Shown one piece after another: positions 32,798 through 60,996 of a stretch of 60,996 bases of DNA. The notes below the pieces were generated by a model that had not been told where the DNA came from, did not search any database, and saw only the letters and a list, made by a program, of their open reading frames with translations. The stretch is from positions 186,001-246,996 of the forward strand of contig NW_026924749.1 of NCBI RefSeq assembly GCF_032062105.1, given 5' to 3'. Positions within the stretch are counted from its first letter, which is position 1; each line of letters opens with the position of its first letter. Made by a program: the position numbers and the translations under genes. The stretch is from Saccostrea cucullata. Its lineage: Eukaryota.

Positions 32798-34987
32798 TCA
32801 TTCTAATTCTCCTAATGCATGTAGTTCTGTAAAGGAAATAGATGTACGAACTTCGGGTGGGGGCAAAGTTTCGCTGATTTTTATTTTCACGTTGTATTTT
32901 CTACTACATACATTTAAAACTCTTTTAAACCTTCTCAGGGCTCTCACATATGGAAATCGCCACTTTTCATCTGTAATTTTTCCATCAAACAAAACAACAA
33001 GCAAGTTTTCAACCTGATTTTCGGAAAGCAGTTTCCATGCCTGATTCATTCTAAACGTTAGATCATCAAAGTTGTCATTTTGAAGAGGTTTAGAAATGAT
33101 AATAATTATGTTTCTGGATGACTTTATTTCTTTGTCTAAATGAATATGGCGAATAGTACCTACATCTTCGTCAACGGGGGGATAGAAACATTTGTACCCC
33201 TCCTTTTTGAGATATAGGAAAATGTCAATTGCAAATTTATTGACGTCCACATTTGAGTCATCCGACAAAATAAAAATATCATACTTGTACGTTTTCTTCC
33301 TATGATCCACAAGACGATTCTTTAGAATTACAAAATCATATCTAAAGTAGATAGCAACTGCCGCAGTCACCAAGACGACAGCAGGTATAAGGAAGAGATT
33401 AAAAATAATTTGGTCAAATTCATCTTCATAACAATCCGAAAAAGCTTCTTCTGCTGCTTGTCGTACTCCATTCGCATTGGTGCAAAACAAAGGATTTGAA
33501 GATTTATTTTGCACAGATGATCTCCAACTGGCGATCCACTCATCCTTGCATTCGCATGATACACTGTTTTTGCCAAACCAGACTTTATCTGGGTCAATGC
33601 TTTTGAATAGTACTGGAAGTTCTATGAGTTTATGATCCAGCAAAAGAAGGGATTTGAGACGACTCGAGGTCTTATTGAACTTCTCCAGAAATTTATCTTC
33701 GATTGTTTGAACCTCATTTTTAGACAAGTCGAAAAGAGTAATATTTGATAAATATGAATGATTATTGAGAGTCTTTGGAGAAGTGAGCTTGGTTATTTTA
33801 TTATTGCTGCAATTCAATTCGATATCATAATTGGTCTGAGGAACTATGTCTGGAATTTTTGTTAAATTCGCATTGGAACAGTCTACTAACATTCGCATTT
33901 GACTTGGTTGTTCAATACACGTGCATTTCTCGGGACAAAAATTTGTTTTATGACATATAAATTGATCAAACACTGAGATGTTATTGAATGTTTTGAGTAC
34001 ATCGATACCTTTCATATTTTCTGGAGAAAGGCATATATACTGTGTTTTATTTGGAATGGAATAAAATCTCTCGAACATATCCTTTTCTGACAAGAGGAGT
34101 TCTCCTAGGTGGCAATCACAGGGCATGGTTAATTTTGAGAACTCGAAAGCCCCAGTGTGATTATATTGATAGGCTTTTTTGATCTCCGATGGTTCCTTAA
34201 ATATGACAGAAAGGGGATGTTTGTTTGTTTTACATGTTCCAAAAATAATATCCCCACCTCCATAACTCTCTTGGAGAGATATTTTGAATTCAGGAACATC
34301 TGTTAATGTAAGGTTTGATTCATCGAATGAAATGTTGCAGAAAACACTTCTCTTCGGGTAAATATTGGAGATGTGTAAATTATCAAAGTGGTTGTGCGAT
34401 AAATCTATCACAAAGATCTCCGTATTTTGTAGTTCAAATATGTAAGGTTGAAGTGATTTGATGCCAGTATGAGCCATTCTAAGTATCCGTAAGTTTGGCA
34501 TATTCTTGAAAGTAGTGTTTGTAATGAACTGTATGTCATTATAACTTACATCTAAAGAATCCAAGGCCTTTAGGCAATTAATTCCTTCAATGTTTGAAAG
34601 TCTGTTTCTTTGAAAGTCCACTGTCACCAGAATATCACTAAAACTACAAATATTATTTGGCAATTGCGTCATCCTTCCGCCCTGATGAAGTATCCATTTG
34701 AATCCAGTTAACGTTTCGTTTGTAACAATTTTACAATGGCCAGTGGGGTTCAGGTATTCCATATATAATGGTTTATATGATATATTCGAAAAAATCTCCC
34801 AAATTGGTTTGCTTTTACAAGCACAACACCTATTTTTAATTTCTTCCTTGGTACATGAATTTGGACACATAATGTTCTGTTTATGTGGACCAACATCTGA
34901 TGTCCAATTATGAAATTCCGTCTGAACAATGCCAGTTTGAATACAGCTACATGTAAATAAAACGAAAATAATTAAATAGTACCCCAT
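32798..34987 (-). CDS. Toll-like receptor (multiple-cysteine-cluster type), single exon, 729 aa, divergent TIR
   Basis: Signal peptide; LRRs (LDSLDVSYNDI, LRILRMAHTGI); internal LRRCT (PCDCHL..YICLSP) and LRRNT (CPEKCTC..VDCS); second LRR block; LRRCT (NSVSCECKDEW); TM IIFNLFLIPAVVLVTAAVAIYF; TIR starting YKYDIFI. Confidence 0.93.
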   Translation of the reverse strand: MGYYLIIFVLFTCSCIQTGIVQTEFHNWTSDVGPHKQNIMCPNSCTKEEIKNRCCACKSKPIWEIFSNISYKPLYMEYLNPTGHCKIVTNETLTGFKWILHQGGRMTQLPNNICSFSDILVTVDFQRNRLSNIEGINCLKALDSLDVSYNDIQFITNTTFKNMPNLRILRMAHTGIKSLQPYIFELQNTEIFVIDLSHNHFDNLHISNIYPKRSVFCNISFDESNLTLTDVPEFKISLQESYGGGDIIFGTCKTNKHPLSVIFKEPSEIKKAYQYNHTGAFEFSKLTMPCDCHLGELLLSEKDMFERFYSIPNKTQYICLSPENMKGIDVLKTFNNISVFDQFICHKTNFCPEKCTCIEQPSQMRMLVDCSNANLTKIPDIVPQTNYDIELNCSNNKITKLTSPKTLNNHSYLSNITLFDLSKNEVQTIEDKFLEKFNKTSSRLKSLLLLDHKLIELPVLFKSIDPDKVWFGKNSVSCECKDEWIASWRSSVQNKSSNPLFCTNANGVRQAAEEAFSDCYEDEFDQIIFNLFLIPAVVLVTAAVAIYFRYDFVILKNRLVDHRKKTYKYDIFILSDDSNVDVNKFAIDIFLYLKKEGYKCFYPPVDEDVGTIRHIHLDKEIKSSRNIIIIISKPLQNDNFDDLTFRMNQAWKLLSENQVENLLVVLFDGKITDEKWRFPYVRALRRFKRVLNVCSRKYNVKIKISETLPPPEVRTSISFTELHALGELE

Positions 34988-35945: not shown

Positions 35946-36129
35946 NNNNNNNNNNNNNNNNNNNNNNNNNNNNNNNNNNNNNNNNNNNNNNNNNNNNNNN
36001 NNNNNNNNNNNNNNNNNNNNNNNNNNNNNNNNNNNNNNNNNNNNNNNNNNNNNNNNNNNNNNNNNNNNNNNNNNNNNNNNNNNNNNNNNNNNNNNNNNNN
36101 NNNNNNNNNNNNNNNNNNNNNNNNNNNNN
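35946..36129. other. Assembly gap (184 N)
   Basis: Run of N. Confidence 1.
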
Positions 36130-52557: not shown

Positions 52558-52825
52558 TTATGTAACCCTAGTGATCAGGCTAGACTACCGCAATAGTTGA
52601 AATATAACAAACAATGTATACTGAGTGAGAATTGTCATTTATTAAATGACAATAAGTATATAACACATATAAAGTTAAGGGGAGATCACCGGGATATTTC
52701 CTGAGTAAAAAGAACAATAAATTTGGCAACGGTATCTCCCCTGTTGCAAACAAACATTACTTTGGCAAAAATATTTTGACAAATAAAAAGTATATAAACC
52801 ACAAAGTTGTCAAAACAAAAAGCTG
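52558..52825 (-). repeat. Split direct repeat B2 (268 bp)
   Basis: Matches 53175-53442 (offset 617) with 2 mismatches seen. Confidence 0.95.
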
Positions 52826-52954
52826 ACATGACAAAAGTTGCAACGATGGCAATTAAGATGGCACAAGGTATATATTATGAAAAAGAAAAAATACAAAACA
52901 TAATTTTGAGACTACAATATTTTATCATGGAGTATGAAGGGGGACGGAGGGTGG

Positions 52955-53176
52955 GTAAATTTCTAAAAACAAATTTGTGAATTTCTTGGCACTTCTAAAT
53001 CAGTGAAAAGACGCTATCTTGTGTCACGTGATTTGCATAAGCGTTACGATTGGATAATTACAACTTTTTACTAAAGGAGACAGCTAATAACACAATAAGA
53101 CTCAAACAAACATGAAAATTGAACTACATTACATCATAGATTACATAAAGGCTATTATTTACAATAATGCTGTATT
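52955..53176 (-). repeat. Split direct repeat A2 (222 bp)
   Basis: Matches 59367-59588 (offset 6412) with 4 mismatches seen. Confidence 0.95.
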
Positions 53177-53442
53177 ATGTAACCCTAGTGATCTGGCTAG
53201 ACTACCGCAATAGTTGAAATATAACAAACAATGTATACTGAGTGAGAATTGTCATTTATTAAATGACAATAAGTATATAACACATATAAAGTTAAGGGGA
53301 GATCACCGGGATATTTCCTGAGTACAAAGAACAATAAATTTGGCAACGGTATCTCCCCTGTTGCAAACAAACATTACTTTGGCAAAAATATTTTGACAAA
53401 TAAAAAGTATATAAACCACAAAGTTGTCAAAACAAAAAGCTG
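53175..53442 (-). repeat. Split direct repeat B1
   Basis: Copy of 52558-52825; abuts A2, sharing TT. Confidence 0.95.
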
Positions 53443-53519
53443 CCACCAAAAGCAAACTGCTATGAAAAGCTGTTTGCAAAAAACACAAGGCCAAAACAGG
53501 TGGACTAGCCAGATCAACA

Positions 53520-53708
53520 AAATCAGGCAGTCTACAGAACATTATATCTATATACAAAATCTTACAGTCTACACAGCATTATAACAACACAAAATCATAC
53601 AGTCTACACAGCATTATAACAACACAAAATCATACAGTGTATATAGCATAATAAGCATATAATAACCTTAAATCATACAGTCTATGCAGCATTATTATAC
53701 AACACAAA
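53520..53708. repeat. Minisatellite of about 35 bp, about 5 copies, in the Ngaro 3' region
   Basis: AAATCATACAGTCTACACAGCATTATAACAACAC and variants. Confidence 0.85.
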
Positions 53709-53937
53709 CAATAAAATGAGCAAGGCTCAGAATGTCAAGTACAATGGAGTAGCAACATATTGAAAGTTATTACTAATACATAAATGAACAAAAATTACAA
53801 ATCATTTGGTTCAAAACATGATGGTGAAACATGAACCAGTAGGCACAGTTTGTGTTATAAGTGGTAAGAAAGAAAATTATTTTAAAACAAATGTATCTAA
53901 TTATATTAAAAATGGTATGAGGAAAAAACAGAATGTT

Positions 53938-54098
53938 TACCCAGCAGTTTACTTCTGTCCTGAGCAAGCTTTGTATGTAAAAATTTTAAAAGTATGCACT
54001 GACACAGCAGTTTACTTCTGCCCTGTGTATTTAGGCGTGAGGCAAAATTAGAAAGACTGATTAGGAAAATTACATAGCAGTTTACTTCTGACCTATGT
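53938..54098 (-). repeat. Three dispersed bulged-hairpin repeats downstream of YR
   Basis: Invariant core CAGAAGTAAACTGCT (- strand) within 53938-53966, 54002-54028, 54072-54098, with differing but complementary outer stems. Confidence 0.85.
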
Positions 54099-54176
54099 GA
54101 CAATATCTAACCATAGGGACTTACAGGACTAGATTCGAATTCACAGAGCAGTTTTGGAATGCTTTCAAATAACATA

Positions 54177-55155
54177 TTAAATAACGAAGCTCTGTAAACG
54201 GATATATCTCCGTACAGCATCTGAATTCCACCTGCCCATTTTCTGTATGCAATTCTCAGAAAAACCTTGCTGGGCTGCATGAGTTGCAGCTCCTATGCGA
54301 AAGCTATGACCTTTATATAGGGCAGGGTTTAAACCAATGAACAAAACTGTGTTGTGTAAATTTTTTGAAACAAATGCATAAGGAACTGGGTCACCTCCCA
54401 TAAATTGGAAGAGGGGACCAGACTGGTGATTAAAGGCTTGAAGATAGAGATATAATGCCGAAACCAGGGCACATGTCACTGTTGTCCAATGCTCTCAGGT
54501 GAATCTGGAAAAGGTCTTTTTTCTTATTTGTTTTGAAATTTTTCAGTAAAAGGACAACTGCAGAGGGGGAGTTGTTTGAAAATTCAAAAGAAACCTCTTC
54601 TCGTTGAATGACCGTGTTTAACGAACCTTTTGTTTTTACTACAAGTTCACCCAAGCGTAAAAAGGCATTAAATGCCAACAGAAAAATAGCCTTTAACATG
54701 ATTCTATAGTGTAGATTTTGCACAGATTTTTGTAAACCGCAAACTAAGTTATGTAGAATGGGGCCCGTTATTGGTAACCTGGTGTCTTTGTTAGGAGCCG
54801 AACGGTGACATCCCTGCATTATTTTCCGGACCAAAAATGCATCTGATGGATCTGAGAGACCAAGAATTTTATGTAGATAGCTTATGGCTGATATATGAGA
54901 TGATATGCTACTAGGGGAATAACCTATGGTAAAGAGGTGAGCAATGAAGTTCGCTGTCACTGAAGAGGAAATTGGTAGCGAGGTCACAGTGGGGTTGAAC
55001 TGTAGCAACAAATCCCAGCTTCTTTTGTAGGCAGACTTGGTGGTGTTGGACAAGGCTGCTGACAGAAGGTGGTGTGCTTGCTGACTCAAATTGCCAATGA
55101 CTTCAGTGGTATTTGGGTCTGTTGTTGGTTTAGATGAGGCATGGAATTGAATGCA
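54177..55155 (-). pseudogene. Tyrosine recombinase (YR) of the Ngaro element, broken by a 1-bp insertion
   Basis: AFLRLGE, KNFKT, GHSFRIGAAT, GRWNSDAVRRYIR (R-K-H-R-W-Y residues present). Frames 55089-54430 and 54479-54177 join as CPVSALYLYL if one base at about 54464 is removed. Confidence 0.92.
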
Positions 55156-56837
55156 GCCTGAAAATTAAAACGAGATAAGTGATCAGCAGCTATGTTGTGC
55201 TTCCCTGGGATGTGTTTCGCTCTGAAATGCACATTGTATCTTAGGGTTGACAATACCAGACGACGTATCAACCTCATGATGACCTTCTCTTTTGACGTTT
55301 GTTTATTGATAATTTGTACAACTGCTAAATTATCTGACATAAAGAGAACTTTTTTGTTTCTAAACTTATCTCCCCAAATCTCTATTGCTATTACAATTGG
55401 AAATAATTCTTTAATGGCTATTTGATATTCTGCCATGTCATCTTTCCAACGTGATGCAAACCATTCAGAACCCAAGATGGCTGCAAACCCTATTGATCCC
55501 GCCGCATCAGTAAAGAGAGTAAGGTGATCAGACGATAACCATTTTTGGGGCAGAAAAACAGATTTCCCATTGAATGTTTCGAGAAAGGTAAGCCAAGTGT
55601 TTATGTCTTCTTTTGTCTCTTCTGTGAGTTCAATCAACTCGTGAGGCTTTGAAACCCCACAGGTTAGGTCAATTAAACGTCTAAGGAAAGCCCTACCTGG
55701 GATAACAATCGAGCATGCAAAATTGAGCAATCCTATTAAAGACTGTAGATCACGTAATGTGCTACGCGTTTTGTTTTTCATTTCTCCAAGGTTTTTTCTT
55801 ATTTTTTCTACTTTCACAGGAGGTAGACGTGCCTCCATTTTGACCGAGTCAACTTCTATGCCATAGATAGTGATTTTGGTAGTGGGGGGTTGAGTTTTTG
55901 ACATTTTAATGGGTACCCCAATTTTTTTGCAAAGGAAAAGAAAATTTGTGAGATCATTCTTGCAATTGTCCGAGCCAGCTGGCCCAATGAAGAAGAAATC
56001 ATCAAGGATATGTGACATACCTCCAGCTTGATATCTGAATTGCATTATCCACTGTAATGCAACACTAAGTTGTTCAAAAATTTGACAGGAACTACTAGCC
56101 CCCATAGGCAAACATTTATCAAAGTAAAATTGGCCTTGCCATGAAAAACCCAATAAATGGTAGTCACTGGGATTGACTGGGATAATTCTAAAAGCGTCCT
56201 GAATATCTGTTTTTACCATCAGACAATAAGCTCCATTCTGTTGGACAAGATGTATTACTAGGTCGATGGAGTCATATTGCACAACTGAATTTTCTTTTGG
56301 GATATTTATATTGACTGAATTGTCTCGGGGATAAGATAAGTCATGAATAATTCTGAATTGACCGGGTTCAGATTTAGGAACCACCCCCAAAGGGGATGAT
56401 ATGAAAGGATCAAAAGGAGGGCAAGGAAAGGGGCCTGCAATACGATTAAGTTCTAAGCTTTTGTGGATATGTGCATCTATGATATCACCATGACTTAATG
56501 CTGATGAATGGTTTTTGGACAAACGTGCAGTTGGAGTAGTGCTACAACCCAAAGAGAAACCAAATTTGAAACCTTCTACTAACAGTTGTTTTAGGTTTTT
56601 GTCATAACCCTCTAATTCTTCACTAAGTTTGTTTGGATTTACTGGCGTGGGAAGTGCGTGACTCTGCAGATTGTTGAGACCTACATTTGTGTTTTGGGTG
56701 TTGTCCCCTGCATATTTGACAGATGTGTGTGAAGGGACATGGTGTGGTTTTACATTTGTCACCTTGGTTAAAGGCGAAGCAGAATTTTGTTCTCCCCGCC
56801 TGTTTGGTACGAAAGGGCTGACTGTAAGGGGCAGGTT
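55086..56837 (-). CDS. Pol ORF (reverse transcriptase plus RNase H), uninterrupted, no early AUG
   Basis: SPLGVVPK, FRIIHDLS, KTDIQDAFR, LPMGASSSC, HILDDFF; RNase H LFTDAAG, IKELFPI, SDNLAVV, ADHLSR. Frame is open from 56837 (after TAA 56840-56838) and overlaps the gag 3' end in the +1 frame. Confidence 0.95.
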   Translation of the reverse strand, partial: NLPLTVSPFVPNRRGEQNSASPLTKVTNVKPHHVPSHTSVKYAGDNTQNTNVGLNNLQSHALPTPVNPNKLSEELEGYDKNLKQLLVEGFKFGFSLGCSTTPTARLSKNHSSALSHGDIIDAHIHKSLELNRIAGPFPCPPFDPFISSPLGVVPKSEPGQFRIIHDLSYPRDNSVNINIPKENSVVQYDSIDLVIHLVQQNGAYCLMVKTDIQDAFRIIPVNPSDYHLLGFSWQGQFYFDKCLPMGASSSCQIFEQLSVALQWIMQFRYQAGGMSHILDDFFFIGPAGSDNCKNDLTNFLFLCKKIGVPIKMSKTQPPTTKITIYGIEVDSVKMEARLPPVKVEKIRKNLGEMKNKTRSTLRDLQSLIGLLNFACSIVIPGRAFLRRLIDLTCGVSKPHELIELTEETKEDINTWLTFLETFNGKSVFLPQKWLSSDHLTLFTDAAGSIGFAAILGSEWFASRWKDDMAEYQIAIKELFPIVIAIEIWGDKFRNKKVLFMSDNLAVVQIINKQTSKEKVIMRLIRRLVLSTLRYNVHFRAKHIPGKHNIAADHLSRFNFQAAFNSMPHLNQQQTQIPLKSLAI

Positions 56838-57819
56838 TTAACGTAATGCATTTTCCCCTCAATTCTTCGACCGGTTTTTGCCAGGGAAGTTCAGCTGTTT
56901 CTTTTAGTTTTCTGAAGGATTCATCATAAGCCCTCCAGGCTGAATCGCCATGTAGTTTGTGAAGTTCCCTAACAAAACTCATGTACTTTAATAGGTGAGG
57001 GGCCTCTGATGGGTCTTTTTCAATTTTAATGCAAATAAAGACCAAAAAGGCATCAGTCCACTGATTAATTGATAAGGGATTTTTTGTTTTTGGATTCTGT
57101 TGCAAGTTGATCACACCTGGTGATATTAACAAAGTAAGAGGGTTTTCCTCATGGTGCGGCAAAAGACACCGTAAATCAATGAATTCATTTGACCAAACTT
57201 TGGATTTTACCTTAGCTGATATGGCCGCACCAAGAGGAATCCCGTCAGTTACAGAAATGAAAGATTTATCTTTGTTTAAGCTAGATGAAACTGTGCCCAC
57301 TGGCTCACCTTCATTTGTCCCAAAAATTTGAGAAACCAATGATGACACTGTCACATCTGTGGATGAGTTGTTTGCATATGTAGATGTGCTCTGACTTGTT
57401 GTGGCAGGCATTTGTTGTGTGGCATTGCTTGAGGTAGATGTGCTCAGACTTGTTATGGCAGGCATTTGTTGTGTGGTATTGCTTGAGGCATTTTGAATTA
57501 CTGCTGGCGCTGGCTCTTGTACCGGGGCAGTTGGCAATTGTGCAGCTGTCAGAAGCGTTGGTTGAGTTAGTACTGTCTCATTACTGACATTATTTGTTAC
57601 TGGTGGCACTGAAATTGTGGCACTAGCAGATGAACTGGTTGCTCTTTGTTGTTTCAGAATTTCTTCCGCCAGTTTCTGATAGTCAATTTCTTGCACGGAA
57701 ACTGTCTTCTGTCTTTTCCGGGTGACTGTGTTGCTAGGCGTTGCTGCCTGTGGATCCCCTTGGGCTGCTGCTGCCTGTGGATCCCCTTGGGCTGCTGCTG
57801 CCTTTCTCCGTTTAGGCAT
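56623..57819 (-). CDS. Gag-like protein of the Ngaro element, 398 aa
   Basis: Low-complexity N-half with internal duplications, KVWSNEFIDLRCLL, INQWTDAF, AWRAYDESFR, and C-terminal Cys/His finger CFAFNQGDKCKTTPCPFTHICQICRGQHPKHKC. Confidence 0.9.
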   Translation of the reverse strand: MPKRRKAAAAQGDPQAAAAQGDPQAATPSNTVTRKRQKTVSVQEIDYQKLAEEILKQQRATSSSASATISVPPVTNNVSNETVLTQPTLLTAAQLPTAPVQEPAPAVIQNASSNTTQQMPAITSLSTSTSSNATQQMPATTSQSTSTYANNSSTDVTVSSLVSQIFGTNEGEPVGTVSSSLNKDKSFISVTDGIPLGAAISAKVKSKVWSNEFIDLRCLLPHHEENPLTLLISPGVINLQQNPKTKNPLSINQWTDAFLVFICIKIEKDPSEAPHLLKYMSFVRELHKLHGDSAWRAYDESFRKLKETAELPWQKPVEELRGKCITLKPAPYSQPFRTKQAGRTKFCFAFNQGDKCKTTPCPFTHICQICRGQHPKHKCRSQQSAESRTSHASKSKQT

Positions 57820-57885
57820 GATCTACATTCTTATTGCATACAAGGATTCAGGAACCGACACACTATTTTTACAAAAATAGTAATA

Positions 57886-58494
57886 GCACACTACTCTGCG
57901 TGTGTTTGAGTATTATATCTCTAAGGGCACACTACTCTGCGTGTGTACAAGTTTTGTGTCTATATAACTTATAAAGGCACACTACTCTGCGTGTGTCTGT
58001 CTATTATTATTATATAAGGGCACACTTCTCTGTGTGCAACTGAATATTATGTGTATAGGTAAGGAAATATTACTCCGTATGATGTCCAATTGTTATGTCA
58101 ATATAATATTACACTACTTTGCGTGTTTCATTTTCCATGTCACTACAGTAAAAAGAAGCACACTACTCTGTGTGAGAAATCAAGGGCACACTACTCTGCG
58201 TGTGACTGAATCGGGGCACACTACTCTGCGTGTAACTGATCGGGGCACACTACTCTGCGTGTGACTGAATCGGGGCACACTACTCTGCGTGCGTCTAAAT
58301 CAGGGCACATATCTCTGCCTGTGTTTAAATAGGGGCACACTACTCAGCGTGTGACTTACCCAAATGACAAAAACAAAGCACAAAATTTCATGAGCGACTC
58401 TTACCTGACATTATTGTAAAAGAGAATGTACTAAACTATATGTTTGACATATACTTAATATTTTTCTTGAAAATTCACACTACTCTGCGTGTGT
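57886..58494 (-). repeat. Array of about 14 short hairpin-forming repeats with variable spacers between the hydrolase and gag
   Basis: CACACTACTCTGCGTG (+) or variants start at 57887, 57928, 57978, 58021, about 58066 (degenerate), 58110, 58159, 58187, 58217, 58246, 58276, 58306, 58336, 58476. Confidence 0.95.
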
Positions 58495-58570
58495 CTTTGT
58501 GGAATCAATTCATTTCTCACATAACACTCTATCAAAGAAAAGTATGTTTTAAATCATAGCATTACTTGCA

Positions 58571-58604
<34 letters not shown>

Positions 58605-58615
58605 TAGTAACATAC

Positions 58616-59200
58616 TCATCTTGAATGTTGCAGTACTGCAATTCTAATACTATGCATATATTTCTTCATATGCCTGGAGTCACCCTCAATATGAACTCCA
58701 TCACGTCCCAGGTAGGACAGGTCCGCCCAAAATCCCCTGTGTGGCCAAAAATACACACCGTCTACTTTCCCTATTTCCTCTTTCAAAAGATTGTTCACTT
58801 TTACCACATCCTCGTTAAACTTGACACGAGAAGCCCATGGCTGACGGCGTAATAACTGTCCAACAATTACAGTTTTTATTCCAACACCATCGCGCAAGTA
58901 TTGTGCATACGAAATTAAGTCCGTACATACTTTCCGAGGATTGTTTAGACTCAAGTCATTACTGCCCATCTGTATAAAACAAATATCGGGGGGTGCGTCA
59001 AACCGTAGAAATTCTGCACAGTGGGCTAGACGTTTGAATGTGAAACCACCGCGTGATCTGAAATCCACTTTGAAGGAGTCCATATCCAAATTTAAATTAG
59101 TCCTAAGATCACTTGCATCTATAAATTCTTTCAAACGGCGGATATAAGAATGTCCTAAGATGCACACAGTTCGAATGTTTACTTCGGGTTCGGCCGCCAT
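58616..59200 (-). CDS. SGNH/GDSL-type hydrolase (esterase) encoded by the Ngaro element, 194 aa from the AUG
   Basis: Block I ILGHSY, block II RGG, block III QMGSNDL, block V DGVH; first AUG at 59200 (MAAEPEV). Confidence 0.9.
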   Translation of the reverse strand: MAAEPEVNIRTVCILGHSYIRRLKEFIDASDLRTNLNLDMDSFKVDFRSRGGFTFKRLAHCAEFLRFDAPPDICFIQMGSNDLSLNNPRKVCTDLISYAQYLRDGVGIKTVIVGQLLRRQPWASRVKFNEDVVKVNNLLKEEIGKVDGVYFWPHRGFWADLSYLGRDGVHIEGDSRHMKKYMHSIRIAVLQHSR

Positions 59201-59366
59201 TGCGTAACCCTGTTTTGCTGGACGGAGCCTGTCTATCCCTGGGACAAAAACACTCAAAAATCCACAAATCACTTACTTTACACTGATGTAATCTTGTTTT
59301 GTAGTCTTCGGATTGGTAAAACAATGCAATAAATTCGTAAAAAACGATAAAAACACTCCTGAAGAC

Positions 59367-59588
59367 GTAAATTTCTAAAAACAAATTTGTGAATTTCTTG
59401 GCACTTCTAAATCAGTGAAAAGACGCTATCTTGTGTCACGTGATTTGAATAAGCGTTACGATTGGATAATTACAACTTTTTCCTAAAGGAGACAGCTAAT
59501 GACACAATAAGACTCAAACAAACATGAAAGTTGAACTACATTACATCATAGATTACATAAAGGCTATTATTTACAATAATGCTGTATT
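59367..59588 (-). repeat. Split direct repeat A1 (5' end of element)
   Basis: Copy of 52955-53176. Confidence 0.95.
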
Positions 59589-60996
59589 TTGTTTTATTCA
59601 AAATTTACCTTTTGATACTTCTTAACTTAGAGCTAACCTTTTCACAAAGAGTAATATTTAAGTGCAGTGAATGGTGGACCCGGAATATCTTTTTAATGAT
59701 TGCTTTATTTTTTGTTCCTTTTTTAGATAATTTTCAGAATTTACATTAAAAAAAAAAGAAATAAAACTTATTTACATTTGTATAGTTTATTGTGTTATGA
59801 ATCTACGGTTATTTTGACTGCACTCATATTGGGAAATATGGATTGTTGAGCTTCCTCCATACAATGACAAAGATGTCCTTAGAAAATTTTCTCTGTATGC
59901 AAGACACAGGATCATTATTCGTCTTACCATTTAAAGAGATTTAAAGTTTTTTTTTCGACAAGACAGCGTTCGTAGTAAATTTAGAAAGAAAAAACCCACG
60001 CAGTATAAAATAAAATTCGCTAATTTTACTGTTACATGTATACATGTACATGTATATTTTTACAATTTTGATGCGATTTAAATATTCTTCAATTGTTTTA
60101 CAAAGAATGTTAAAAAATATAAACATTTATTCTTACCGAAAACTATTAAATGTCACACATTATAGCTAACAATATCATTGTGTTTTGTAGATTAAATTTT
60201 GTTGATATTCCATATATCGGTAATACACGTTTTTACGACTTGTTCCTGTAAATTTGTACATGTTACAAATATTATTGAAATAATTTTCTCGTGTACATGT
60301 TTTTCTACAAATCGGCTACAGAGTGTTGGATTTAAATGTTTTAAGTTTTCTTTTGATTATATACATGTACATAAGAAAGAAAGAAATCTAAAGAGTTAGA
60401 ATATAACATTACATTTGTAATCAAAAGAATTTTCGAAGTTGAGGTTATTGAAAAACCCTGTAACATCATTTATCTCTTCGAAATCAGTTCTAGGCAATTA
60501 AACCTCTTTCACTAGACCTGCGTGCCAGTGAAGGTCTAAATTCGAAAACCCTAGAAGAGGTATACGAGTCAAAATTTCTTGATCGAGATGTAAAACAACA
60601 TTAATTTTCGAAAAAGTAAAAAAAAAAACTACTGATTTTTCATATTTTCTAAAAACTTCTTTGAAGTTTTGAGAATCCATGTATGATTTAGACTTTTATA
60701 GCACAGCGCGTCTGGATTTTTGGCCTTTACAGTTGTTAATCATTTTTTGATTTGTAAAAATCAAAGGTTTTGCAGAGCATTTGTTGGACCAAGCAAGACA
60801 CCATTTCGTTGACTGGAATATTAAAAAGTTATTTAAGGCAGAAACGAAGGTTGTATCAAAGAAATTAATGATTATCATGTAAAAGGTGAACTGTGAATAT
60901 ATACGTATCGTATTTGAGATGCAGATGCAGATTCAAAACCCTGTTTCTTTGAAATACAGTTGTTTTAATTAGTTTTAACATCAAATATGATATAAT

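What the first reader, a model, noticed from the sequence alone, without database searches (positions are those of the whole stretch)
52558..59588. Young Ngaro retrotransposon with a hydrolase-first layout, RNA hairpin arrays on both sides of the coding core, and predicted non-canonical expression
Seen: the order on the minus strand is A1, SGNH hydrolase, A27, 14-hairpin array, gag, pol, YR, 3 hairpins, minisatellite, B1, A2, spacer, B2. The repeat pairs differ at only about 2/268 and 4/222 positions, and the only lesion I found is one extra base in YR. Known: A1...B1-A2-B2 split repeats define Ngaro/PAT-type elements, and some Ngaro elements carry an SGNH ORF. Inference: the combination of hydrolase-first order, repeat-spacer array, frameshift-derived Gag-Pol and splice-derived Gag-YR looks like a coherent expression and packaging system that I do not recognise as described.
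Basis: partly seen in the sequence, partly recalled or inferred. Interest (0 to 1): 0.85.

Follow-up and report, generated by a model that had tools for sequence, protein, structure and literature searches.

The report
Oyster Ngaro retrotransposon, esterase-first, spliced recombinase
This is a recent, nearly intact copy of a tyrosine-recombinase (Ngaro-type) retrotransposon in the rock oyster Saccostrea cucullata. Comparison with sister copies shows that its bivalve lineage puts an esterase gene first, most likely makes Gag-Pol by a +1 ribosomal frameshift, and makes its recombinase from a spliced Gag-recombinase message, none of which I found described.

Summary
Window 59592-52558 (minus strand, 7,035 bp) is a Ngaro-type element with split repeats A1...B1-A2-B2. 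The order is SGNH esterase ORF, A27, 13 copies of an 18-nt hairpin motif, gag, pol (RT/RNase H), YR, three 3' hairpins, a 35-nt minisatellite. The window is the end of S. cucullata contig JAVVLV010006886.1.

Esterase-first order, a hairpin array before gag and dispersed hairpins after YR recur in other Saccostrea families, Crassostrea virginica, Pinctada and Pecten. They are lineage features, not accidents.

Splice-derived Gag-YR is well supported:
- A 5' splice site AG|GTGAGCC in gag and a 3' site YYYCAG|G near the pol end are conserved and phase-matched in six elements.
- RefSeq models use them, including at this locus.
- L006 is a retro-copied spliced form with exactly this junction.

Gag-Pol: pol is always in the +1 frame. 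That frame opens 8-22 codons before a conserved CCC_UUU_CGU, the influenza PA-X/amalgavirus +1 frameshift motif.

This copy also lacks a 305-nt GT..AG leader segment present in its 96% sibling, so it probably came from a spliced RNA. Its YR frame is broken. The packaging role of the hairpins is untested. Verdict: a new variant of a known kind; interest 0.64.

The parts
59367..59592 (-). A1, 5' split direct repeat (226 nt). Contains a CACGTG box that also occurs at the matching place in L002 and L004.
   Evidence: 98% identical to A2; boundary; CACGTG seen
59271..59276 (-). Consensus 5' splice-site hexamer GTAAGT in the leader, about 70 nt upstream of the esterase ATG. Its use is untested.
   Evidence: A GT(A/G/C)AG(T/G) donor lies 45-95 nt upstream of the esterase ATG in all families examined
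58616..59200 (-). First ORF: stand-alone SGNH/GDSL esterase, 194 aa, intact.
   Evidence: Blocks GHS, GG, GxND and DGVH are conserved. Pfam GDSL hits are below the cut-off. AF2 model pLDDT 91.5 matches SGNH hydrolases at TM 0.6-0.72. Best PDB sequence hit is 4c1b, the ZfL2-1 ORF1p esterase, E = 0.009.
58571..58597 (-). A27 homopolymer after the esterase stop. Specific to this family and variable in length.
   Evidence: L001 has G+A21 here; L002 and L003 have none; Pecten has A21 at a different place.
57885..58495 (-). Array of 13 copies of the 18-nt unit CACAC[GCAGAGTA]GTGTG (5-bp stem, 8-nt loop), spaced 28-50 nt apart in two blocks.
   Evidence: Analogous arrays with different palindromic units lie at the same place in L006, L007, L004 and L008.
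57826..57827 (-). Junction where a 305-nt GT..AG leader segment (L001 11366-11670) is precisely absent. Read as the footprint of a spliced RNA template.
   Evidence: A 3' splice site lies 5-10 nt upstream of the gag ATG in L001, L002, L003, L006, L007 and L008.
56623..57819 (-). gag, 398 aa. Basic N-terminus, Ser/Thr/Gln-rich middle, conserved C-terminal half with a Cys/His knuckle.
   Evidence: No Pfam family.
57307..57309 (-). Gag 5' splice site: exon ends at G 57309, intron GT at 57308-57307 (AG|GTGAGCC, phase 1).
   Evidence: Conserved at the nucleotide level in W, L001, L002, L003, L007 and L008.
56809..56817 (-). CCC_TTT_CGT (Pro-Phe-Arg in gag): candidate +1 ribosomal frameshift site.
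   Evidence: The pol frame opens at 56837, 7 codons upstream. The motif is identical or CCT_TTT_CGT in 6 of 7 elements. It matches the UCC_UUU_CGU / UUU_CGN +1 sites (PMC3498833, PMC5052127).
55086..56837 (-). pol (RT, thumb, RNase H) in the +1 frame relative to gag. No ATG before the RT domain.
   Evidence: Pfam RVT_1 2.6e-08, RVT_thumb 3.2e-05, weak RNase H. Frame relation.
55157..55159 (-). 3' splice site for the recombinase exon: AG at 55159-55158, exon starts at 55157 (TTTTAATTTTCAG|G). It lies inside the pol C-terminus and accepts phase 1.
   Evidence: The RefSeq model at this locus (3178..6567 in L010, 412 aa) fits exon 1 + exon 2 exactly.
54177..55157 (-). Tyrosine recombinase exon (SAM-like N domain plus catalytic domain). 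The frame is broken by a 1-nt indel near 54445. No usable ATG of its own.
   Evidence: Pfam Phage_int_SAM_1 and Phage_integrase. The ORF is intact and collinear in L001-L003. Break located.
53938..54098 (-). Three dispersed 28-nt hairpins of form NNNCAG-GT-CAG[loop]CTG-CTGNNN, downstream of YR.
   Evidence: 26 copies from 7 elements: 79% of cells paired against 72% in shuffles (0/500); 25 double-sided changes against 12.5; slid controls 18-63%. Fold energies -5.5 to -9.9 kcal/mol.
53517..53654 (-). 35-nt minisatellite, 3.9 copies. Family-specific (also in L001).
53175..53445 (-). B1 repeat
   Evidence: 99% identical to B2
52955..53180 (-). A2 repeat
52829..52954 (-). Unique 126-nt spacer between A2 and B2
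52558..52828 (-). [quoted passage not shown]

Best explanation
The feature is one copy of a bivalve lineage of Ngaro-type tyrosine-recombinase retrotransposons, in Saccostrea cucullata.

Shown:
- The element has split direct repeats and four genes in the order esterase, gag, pol, YR.
- That order, a hairpin-unit array between esterase and gag, and dispersed hairpins after YR are conserved from oysters to scallops.

Inferred expression programme:
1. The unspliced RNA carries the esterase as its first ORF and serves as the genome.
2. Gag is read from an RNA whose leader is spliced to an acceptor 5-10 nt before the gag ATG. One such intron, 305 nt, is documented by its precise absence from this copy.
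3. Gag-Pol is made when a fraction of ribosomes slip +1 on CCC_UUU_CGU, about 60 codons before the gag stop. This works as in influenza PA-X: tRNA-Phe re-pairs from UUU to UUC while the CGU codon waits.
4. The recombinase has no start codon in oysters. It is made from a subgenomic mRNA in which a 2.15-kb intron, covering the C-terminal half of gag and nearly all of pol, is removed. This joins the first ~170 residues of Gag, a basic and probably nuclear-targeting region, in frame to YR.

Spliced RNAs keep both ends and the hairpin arrays, and they are occasionally reverse-transcribed. That gave the pol-less element L006 and the leader-intron-less copy in this window.

The window copy has a broken YR frame, so it could move only with recombinase supplied by siblings.

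The hairpin arrays are most likely cis-acting RNA signals recognised by an element protein, for packaging or reverse-transcription priming. This last step is the weakest.
For: Anatomy.

Host and locus.

Layout is conserved in L001-L003 (S. cucullata, 52-98% aa identity), L004 (Pinctada), L007 (C. virginica) and L008 (Pecten).

Gag-YR splice:
- Donor and acceptor are conserved and both phase 1 in six elements. The predicted lengths of 487 aa (L001), 448 aa (L007) and 412 aa (window) equal the RefSeq products.
- L006 has 100% identical A and B pairs and a contiguous 470-aa Gag(N)-YR ORF. Its junction falls at the predicted residue.
- That ORF is 92% identical and collinear with isoform X2 of LOC134254984. 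Isoform X1 of the same locus is the pol protein.
- The oyster YR frame has no ATG before the SAM-like domain.

Leader intron.

+1 frameshift:
- pol is at +1 in all families.
- The +1 frame has stops every 15-30 codons through gag but none in the last 70-115 codons, while the +2 frame does have stops there.
- The open stretch begins 8-22 codons before CCC/CCT_TTT_CGT in 6 of 7 elements, always with Arg codon CGT.
- The motif is an experimentally established +1 site (PMC3498833, PMC5052127).

Esterase.

Hairpins.
Against: No RNA or protein data were available here. RefSeq models may be propagated by homology rather than by RNA-seq.

The +1 site is CCC_TTT_CAA in Pecten. An acceptor-like YYYCCAG|T at the start of conserved pol is also in phase with the gag donor.

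The 5' hairpins are thermodynamically weak: array z = -0.79, units z = -1.1 to -1.8. A 5-bp stem arises in about 17% of shuffled units. Within Saccostrea the unit varies mostly on one side.

How gag is translated downstream of the esterase ORF is unresolved. No copy or model joining the leader donor to the gag acceptor was found.

The absence of the 305-nt segment could be a deletion at a 3-nt GTA microhomology.
Confidence: 0.72

Rival explanations
1. The Gag-YR join is not a biological splice. L006 would be a chance internal deletion, the RefSeq Gag-YR models would be artefacts seeded by such deleted copies, and YR would be translated another way, for example by re-initiation or a frameshift at the overlapping pol stop (TTGA).
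For: The YR frame overlaps the pol stop by 4 nt and is open for 75 nt upstream. In Pecten an ATG lies near the YR domain start. No transcript data were seen here.
Against: The same GT and AG positions and the same phase recur in six elements down to 28-31% Gag/YR identity. The donor nucleotides GGTGAGCC are fixed across families with 55% Gag identity. L006's junction falls exactly at the predicted residue. The oyster YR frame has no AUG.
Confidence: 0.1
2. Gag-Pol is produced by splicing, from a gag donor to the YYYCCAG|T at the Pro-Val that starts the conserved pol, rather than by a +1 frameshift.
For: The acceptor-like sequence is present in W, L002, L003, L007 and L008. It is in phase with the phase-1 gag donor. 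In Pecten it lies after the gag stop and follows a strong pyrimidine tract.
Against: The +1 frame is kept free of stops for 185-346 nt upstream of that AG in every family, while the +2 frame is not. A spliced route would not need this. No Gag(N)-Pol processed ORF or model was found among 120 pol homologues. The CCC_UUU_CGU codon choice is conserved.
Confidence: 0.15
3. The arrays are not RNA hairpins. They would be tandem double-stranded DNA binding sites for a host or element protein (an enhancer or insulator, like the Su(Hw) site array in the gypsy leader), or simply fast-evolving minisatellites tolerated in a spacer.
For: Folding is weak. The loop and stem are conserved as sequence across three Saccostrea families, with few compensatory changes. 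Palindromes with a fixed spacer also suit dimeric DNA binders.
Against: Five lineages have unrelated unit sequences. Four keep a 5-6-bp palindromic stem around a 7-8-nt asymmetric loop; the C. virginica unit is a 4+4-bp two-part stem. All sit at the same position. In the Pecten array the two alternating unit types differ by a compensatory change plus a G-U wobble. The 3' hairpins show significant covariation. Both retro-copied spliced forms retain the arrays.
Confidence: 0.3
4. The esterase ORF plus A27 is a host mRNA retrocopy that landed in the leader of one Ngaro copy.
For: A poly(A) run follows the ORF by 18 nt in the window and in L001.
Against: Esterase-first is present in all families and in three bivalve orders, most without an A-tract at that place. 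The catalytic residues are conserved.
Confidence: 0.02

Closest known systems
Ngaro-like retrotransposons of vertebrates (DrNgaro, Xenopus DIRS-53_XT/54_XT)
   Same: A1...B1-A2-B2 split direct repeats, the order gag-RT/RH-YR, no methyltransferase, an extra SGNH hydrolase ORF, overlapping ORFs (PMC9210276).
   Different: In vertebrates the SGNH ORF follows YR. Here it is the first ORF, separated from gag by a hairpin array. On a circle the two gene orders are the same, so the repeat module sits on the other side of the esterase (inference). No splice, +1 site or hairpin arrays are described for the vertebrate elements in the papers held. Homology between the two esterases was not tested.
Influenza A PA-X and amalgavirus +1 programmed frameshift sites (UCC_UUU_CGU, UUU_CGN)
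   Same: The same core, CC_UUU_CGU, in the zero frame. The downstream ORF is at +1 without its own start codon. The motif is conserved at synonymous positions.
   Different: The context is a eukaryotic retrotransposon gag-pol junction. Known retroelement +1 sites (Ty1 CUU_AGG_C, Ty3 GCG_AGU_U; from my own knowledge) differ. Not shown experimentally here. Pecten has CAA instead of CGU.
Subgenomic splicing in retroviruses (env mRNA; avian retroviral env and src mRNAs carry the first gag codons; foamy-virus pol mRNA) and retro-copied spliced forms
   Same: A donor inside gag gives a fusion of Gag N-terminal residues to a downstream protein. Spliced RNAs that keep the cis signals can be reverse-transcribed into defective copies.
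   Different: About 170 Gag residues are fused to a tyrosine recombinase. The intron removes pol. The element belongs to the DIRS order, for which I found no report of splicing. The retrovirus comparisons rest on my own knowledge.
SGNH esterase of non-LTR retrotransposon ORF1p (ZfL2-1, PDB 4c1b)
   Same: A transposon-borne SGNH esterase encoded in the first ORF. It is the best PDB sequence match to the esterase profile (E = 0.009). ZfL2-1 esterase is catalytically active and binds phospholipids (PMC3905857).
   Different: Here it is a stand-alone 194-aa protein, not a domain of an RNA-binding ORF1p. The match is weak, and the fold search ranks PAF-acetylhydrolase-like and sialate O-acetylesterases first.
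PAT-like and DIRS1-like elements
   Same: YR retrotransposons. PAT-like elements also have split direct repeats.
   Different: PAT-like and DIRS1-like elements have gag-YR-pol order with a methyltransferase domain. DIRS1-like elements have inverted terminal repeats plus an internal complementary region (PMC3266345). None of these is present here.

Membership tests
Ngaro-like (order DIRS) | Split direct repeats A1 ... B1-A2-B2 | tested here: met
   226-nt A pair and 271-nt B pair in that order. The same holds in L001, L003, L004, L006 and L008.
Ngaro-like (order DIRS) | RT/RNase H pol followed by a tyrosine recombinase; no protease, no DDE integrase | tested here: met
   Pfam RVT_1, RVT_thumb, weak RNase H, Phage_int_SAM_1 and Phage_integrase only.
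Ngaro-like (order DIRS) | No methyltransferase domain in pol | tested here: met
   The 558-aa pol ORF gives no methyltransferase hit at E <= 0.1. Criterion from PMC3266345 and PMC9210276.
Ngaro-like (order DIRS) | Integration without target-site duplication, via a short shared core | tested here: met
   A and B overlap by 1-4 A-rich nt. The same nt lie at both ends, with no longer duplication, in 5 elements.
Ngaro-like (order DIRS) | RT/RH groups with reference Ngaro sequences in a tree | not tested
Vertebrate-type Ngaro with hydrolase | SGNH ORF located after YR | tested here: not met
   The SGNH ORF lies between A1 and gag in all eight elements examined.
DIRS1-like | Inverted terminal repeats plus internal complementary region | tested here: not met
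   No inverted repeat pairs at the element ends.
PAT-like | DIRS1-like gene set (gag, YR, RT/RH/MT) with split direct repeats | tested here: not met
   YR follows pol and there is no methyltransferase.
SGNH/GDSL hydrolase | Blocks I (GxS), II (G), III (GxND) and V (DxxH) and a flavodoxin-like fold | tested here: met
   GHS, GG, G-ND and DGVH are invariant or nearly so in 22 sequences. Model pLDDT 91.5; SGNH structures match at TM 0.6-0.72. The window protein is below Pfam's gathering score, while several homologues carry PF13472 or PF00657.
UUU_CGN-type +1 programmed frameshift | Zero-frame UUU followed by CGN; downstream ORF in the +1 frame with no start of its own; motif conserved among relatives | tested here: met
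   Six of 7 elements have it; Pecten has CAA.
UUU_CGN-type +1 programmed frameshift | Transframe protein demonstrated | not testable with these tools
   Needs a reporter assay, Ribo-seq or mass spectrometry.
Spliced subgenomic mRNA (retrovirus-like expression) | Canonical GT/AG sites, frame-preserving, conserved; products or processed copies observed | tested here: met
   L006 is the processed copy.
Spliced subgenomic mRNA (retrovirus-like expression) | Junction-spanning transcripts | not testable with these tools
   No RNA-seq is available here. The basis of the RefSeq models is unknown.

The most novel reading that the evidence does not exclude
Bivalve Ngaro elements are 'complex' retrotransposons with a retrovirus-like programme:
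- a leader donor upstream of the esterase and an acceptor in front of each downstream gene;
- a PA-X-type +1 frameshift for Gag-Pol;
- a Gag(N)-recombinase fusion from a subgenomic mRNA;
- multi-copy hairpin arrays that act as the packaging or priming signal.

Under this reading only RNAs that retain the arrays are copied. Spliced RNAs that retain them then found non-autonomous lineages such as L006.
Probability: 0.3. Interest if true: 0.8.

Novelty: new variant of a known kind. Interest (0 to 1): 0.64.

Why it matters
How DIRS-order elements express their overlapping ORFs has been left open. The papers held say only that ORFs overlap or are 'frameshifted'.

This lineage gives concrete, testable answers:
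- a defined +1 slip site identical to a well-studied viral one;
- a defined splice that explains a recombinase ORF with no start codon;
- natural retro-copies of spliced RNAs that show which RNAs can be templated.

It also shows that dozens of RefSeq 'integrase/recombinase xerD homolog' genes in oysters, scallops and mussels are Ngaro Gag-YR products. That matters for bivalve genome annotation.

The esterase-first layout parallels the esterase in ORF1 of CR1/L2 LINEs. It gives a second, independent system in which to ask what a lipid or acetyl esterase does for retrotransposition.

Tried and rejected
1. Other copies in the window: none.
2. Gag(N)-Pol spliced products: none among the 120 best pol homologues. 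Mizuhopecten isoform X1 and the Pecten pol model start in the pol frame, not with Gag. The 873-aa Pinctada model is an ab initio join.
3. Thermodynamic support for the 5' array: not significant. Covariation inside the Saccostrea-type unit is too low to test.
4. Rfam: only two sub-threshold chance hits.
5. The 305-nt leader segment is not a repeat elsewhere in about 190 kb of fetched loci, and it cannot be aligned to other families.
6. Look-ups of the Mytilus and Mizuhopecten Gag-YR models failed. The Mytilus locus L009 is 5'-truncated. The Pecten esterase locus L005 has no Ngaro genes downstream.
7. The last context look-up returned only the window's own contig, so no further same-family siblings could be examined.
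8. Goodwin & Poulter 2004 is not held. Repbase and Dfam are not available.
9. A +1 shift at the gag stop codon was considered and dropped, because the sequence there is not conserved.
10. The joined Gag-YR product of the window was not assembled or searched. The exons were handled separately by reference and only phase arithmetic was done. The natural contiguous ORF of L006 and database proteins served instead.

Full report
**What is there.**
On the minus strand, window 59592-52558 is a 7,035-bp element bounded by split direct repeats.
- A1 (59592-59367) matches A2 (53180-52955) at 221/226 positions.
- B1 (53445-53175) matches B2 (52828-52558) at 268/271 positions.
- A and B overlap by two bases (AA) at the B1/A2 junction. 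The same AA sits at both outer ends, and there is no longer target duplication.

Between the repeats lie, in order:
- a 194-aa ORF with SGNH esterase motifs (59200-58616);
- an A27 run;
- 13 copies of the 18-nt unit CACACGCAGAGTAGTGTG (11 at 3 or fewer mismatches, none expected by chance);
- gag (57819-56623);
- pol with RT, thumb and RNase H (frame open 56837-55086);
- a tyrosine recombinase in two frames (55157-54177);
- three 28-nt hairpins;
- a 35-nt minisatellite.

The window is the end of Saccostrea cucullata contig JAVVLV010006886.1, assembly GCA_032062105.1. No second copy lies in the window.

**Is the layout an accident of one copy?**
No. I fetched loci around esterase and Gag-YR homologues:
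- L001: same family, 96% nucleotide identity.
- L002 and L003: other S. cucullata families, 52-72% protein identity.
- L004: Pinctada imbricata.
- L007: Crassostrea virginica.
- L008: Pecten maximus.

All read A1, esterase, tandem array, gag, pol, YR, dispersed 3' hairpins, B1-A2-B2. In L007 the terminal repeats themselves were not examined.

The papers held describe the Ngaro SGNH ORF only in vertebrates, and after YR (PMC9210276). None mentions an esterase-first order. The A27 run is not conserved: it is G+A21 in L001, absent in L002 and L003, and elsewhere in Pecten. So the esterase is not a captured retrogene.

The esterase itself is under constraint. The GHS, GG, GxND and DGVH blocks are conserved in 22 sequences. 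The AlphaFold model (pLDDT 91.5) matches SGNH hydrolases. The best PDB sequence match is the ORF1p esterase of the zebrafish LINE ZfL2-1 (4c1b, E = 0.009).

**The recombinase is expressed from a spliced Gag-YR message.**
This is inferred, with strong comparative support.
- In oysters the YR frame has no ATG before its SAM-like domain.
- In gag, at the Gly of a conserved (E/A)-G-E-P, every family has AG|GTGAG(C/G)C with the exon ending in phase 1 (window exon end 57309).
- Near the end of pol, inside the conserved LSRF-x-F-Q|AAF, every family has a pyrimidine tract and CAG|G that accepts phase 1 (window exon start 55157).
- The YR frame is open from there on.
- The arithmetic gives 487 aa for L001, 448 aa for L007 and 412 aa for the window. 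The window product ends at the premature stop of the broken frame. These are exactly the product lengths of the RefSeq genes called at those loci.
- tblastn shows that the C. virginica protein P0050 is made of those two exons.

Most tellingly, L006 is a 5.4-kb element with 100% identical A and B pairs. It has an esterase, an array, and a single contiguous 470-aa ORF in which the Gag N-terminus runs into YR at the predicted residue. It has no pol. That ORF is 92% identical and collinear with isoform X2 of LOC134254984, and isoform X1 of the same locus is the pol protein. L006 is therefore best read as a reverse-transcribed spliced RNA.

Full-coverage Gag-YR models, mostly named 'integrase/recombinase xerD homolog', exist in Saccostrea, Crassostrea, Ostrea, Mizuhopecten and Mytilus.

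The exons were treated separately by reference.

**This copy itself comes from a spliced RNA.**
This is an inference. L001 carries 305 nt (11366-11670) between the array and gag. The segment begins GTAAGA and ends with a pyrimidine-rich ...TTGTAG. In the window it is missing to the base, at junction 57827/57826.

An AG 5-10 nt upstream of the gag ATG, behind a pyrimidine tract, is present in L001, L002, L003, L006, L007 and L008. The segment is not repeated elsewhere in the fetched DNA. A deletion at the 3-nt GTA microhomology cannot be excluded.

**Gag-Pol by a +1 frameshift.**
This is also an inference.
- pol is in the +1 frame in all families and has no ATG in the window.
- Through most of gag the +1 frame has a stop every 15-30 codons. 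It has none in the last 70-115 codons, while the +2 frame does have stops there.
- The open stretch starts 8-22 codons before a Pro-Phe-Arg encoded as CCC (or CCT)_TTT_CGT in the window, L001, L002, L003, L004 and L007. Pecten has CCC_TTT_CAA.
- UCC_UUU_CGU is the site of +1 frameshifting for influenza A PA-X, and UUU_CGN is the amalgavirus +1 motif (PMC3498833, PMC5052127).
- A splice acceptor-like CCAG|T at the start of conserved pol is an alternative. The long stop-free +1 stretch upstream of it argues for frameshifting, and no Gag(N)-Pol product was found.

**Hairpins.**
The 3' units align across seven elements. They show pairing above shuffled and slid controls:
- 79% of cells paired against 72% in shuffles, 0 of 500 shuffles reaching the observed value;
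- 25 double-sided changes against 12.5;
- slid controls 18-63%.

Pecten has a different 3' hairpin in the same place.

The 5' arrays have unrelated units in each lineage:
- Saccostrea: CACAC[8]GTGTG
- L006: TTGCG[8]CGCAA
- C. virginica: a two-part GAAC..GGGA[5]TCCC..GTTC
- Pinctada: AACAT[8]ATGTT
- Pecten: GTACAT[7]ATGTAC

All lie between esterase and gag.

Folding energies are modest and not significant against shuffles. The case for RNA hairpins therefore rests on this turnover with retained shape, and a double-stranded DNA binding-site array remains a live rival. Both retro-copied spliced forms retain the arrays. That fits a packaging or priming signal but does not prove one.

**State of this copy.**
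The esterase, gag and pol frames are open. YR is interrupted by a single-base indel near 54445 relative to the intact sibling ORFs. The repeat pairs differ at 8 of 497 positions. The copy is recent but not new, and it is not autonomous.

**Classification and novelty.**
Structural criteria for Ngaro are met:
- split direct repeats;
- gag-RT/RH-YR order;
- no methyltransferase;
- no target duplication.

DIRS1-like and PAT-like criteria are not met (PMC3266345). RT phylogeny against references was not possible.

I found no paper describing an esterase-first Ngaro, a splice in any DIRS-order element, or this +1 motif in a retrotransposon. Repbase and Dfam could not be consulted, and the founding Ngaro paper is not held.

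I rate it a new variant of a known kind, of real interest to transposon biologists and to bivalve genome annotators.

Noticed in passing
L006:9507-14920 (S. cucullata JAVVLV010022813.1): A 5.4-kb pol-less Ngaro derivative with 100% identical A and B pairs. Its single 470-aa ORF is Gag N-terminus fused to YR at the predicted splice junction. It appears to be a retro-copied subgenomic mRNA.
   Followed up: yes
window 32798-34987 (-): A single 729-aa ORF with leucine-rich repeats and a C-terminal TIR domain, i.e. a Toll-like-receptor-type gene.
   Followed up: partly
window 7745-9616: Tandem array of a 166-bp unit, about 11 copies at 89% match, with a 499-bp higher-order period. It looks like a satellite or a tandem repeat inside a mobile element.
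   Followed up: no
window 20766-21077 and 22987-23278: Two related dimers of 149-153 bp, 2 kb apart.
   Followed up: no
window 35946-36129: A run of 184 N (assembly gap or masked), left untouched.
   Followed up: no
window 59276-59239 (-); same place in L001-L004, L006, L008: A consensus 5' splice site 45-95 nt upstream of the esterase ATG is followed 28-45 nt later by a pyrimidine-rich CAG|G. This is too short for an ordinary intron. The donor may serve the acceptor in front of gag, but no evidence for that join was found.
   Followed up: partly
window about 59232-59220 (-); L002, L003: The motif GGCTCCGTCCA just upstream of the esterase ATG is conserved across three Saccostrea families. Its function is unknown.
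   Followed up: no
window 57742-57803 (-): A perfect 27-nt tandem duplication (2.3 copies) at the start of gag adds 9 residues relative to L001. A 54-nt duplication at 57380-57488 is shared with L001.
   Followed up: partly
proteins P0199, P0215, P0269: Ngaro pol proteins 50-61% identical to this one are deposited as genes of metagenome-assembled genomes of bivalve symbionts (Candidatus Thiodiazotropha endolucinida, Sedimenticola sp.) on 3-6-kb contigs. They are most likely host DNA binned with the symbiont.
   Followed up: no
L005:589-10582 (Pecten maximus): An intact esterase homologue without Ngaro genes downstream lies beside a Harbinger-like pair (Myb-type DNA-binding protein and DDE_Tnp_4 transposase). 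A second esterase fragment lies 3 kb further on.
   Followed up: no
L008:5219-10717 (Pecten maximus): A RefSeq model of 562 aa with a recombinase domain starts inside A1, upstream of the esterase ATG, and spans esterase, gag and pol. It may join esterase-region exons to YR.
   Followed up: no
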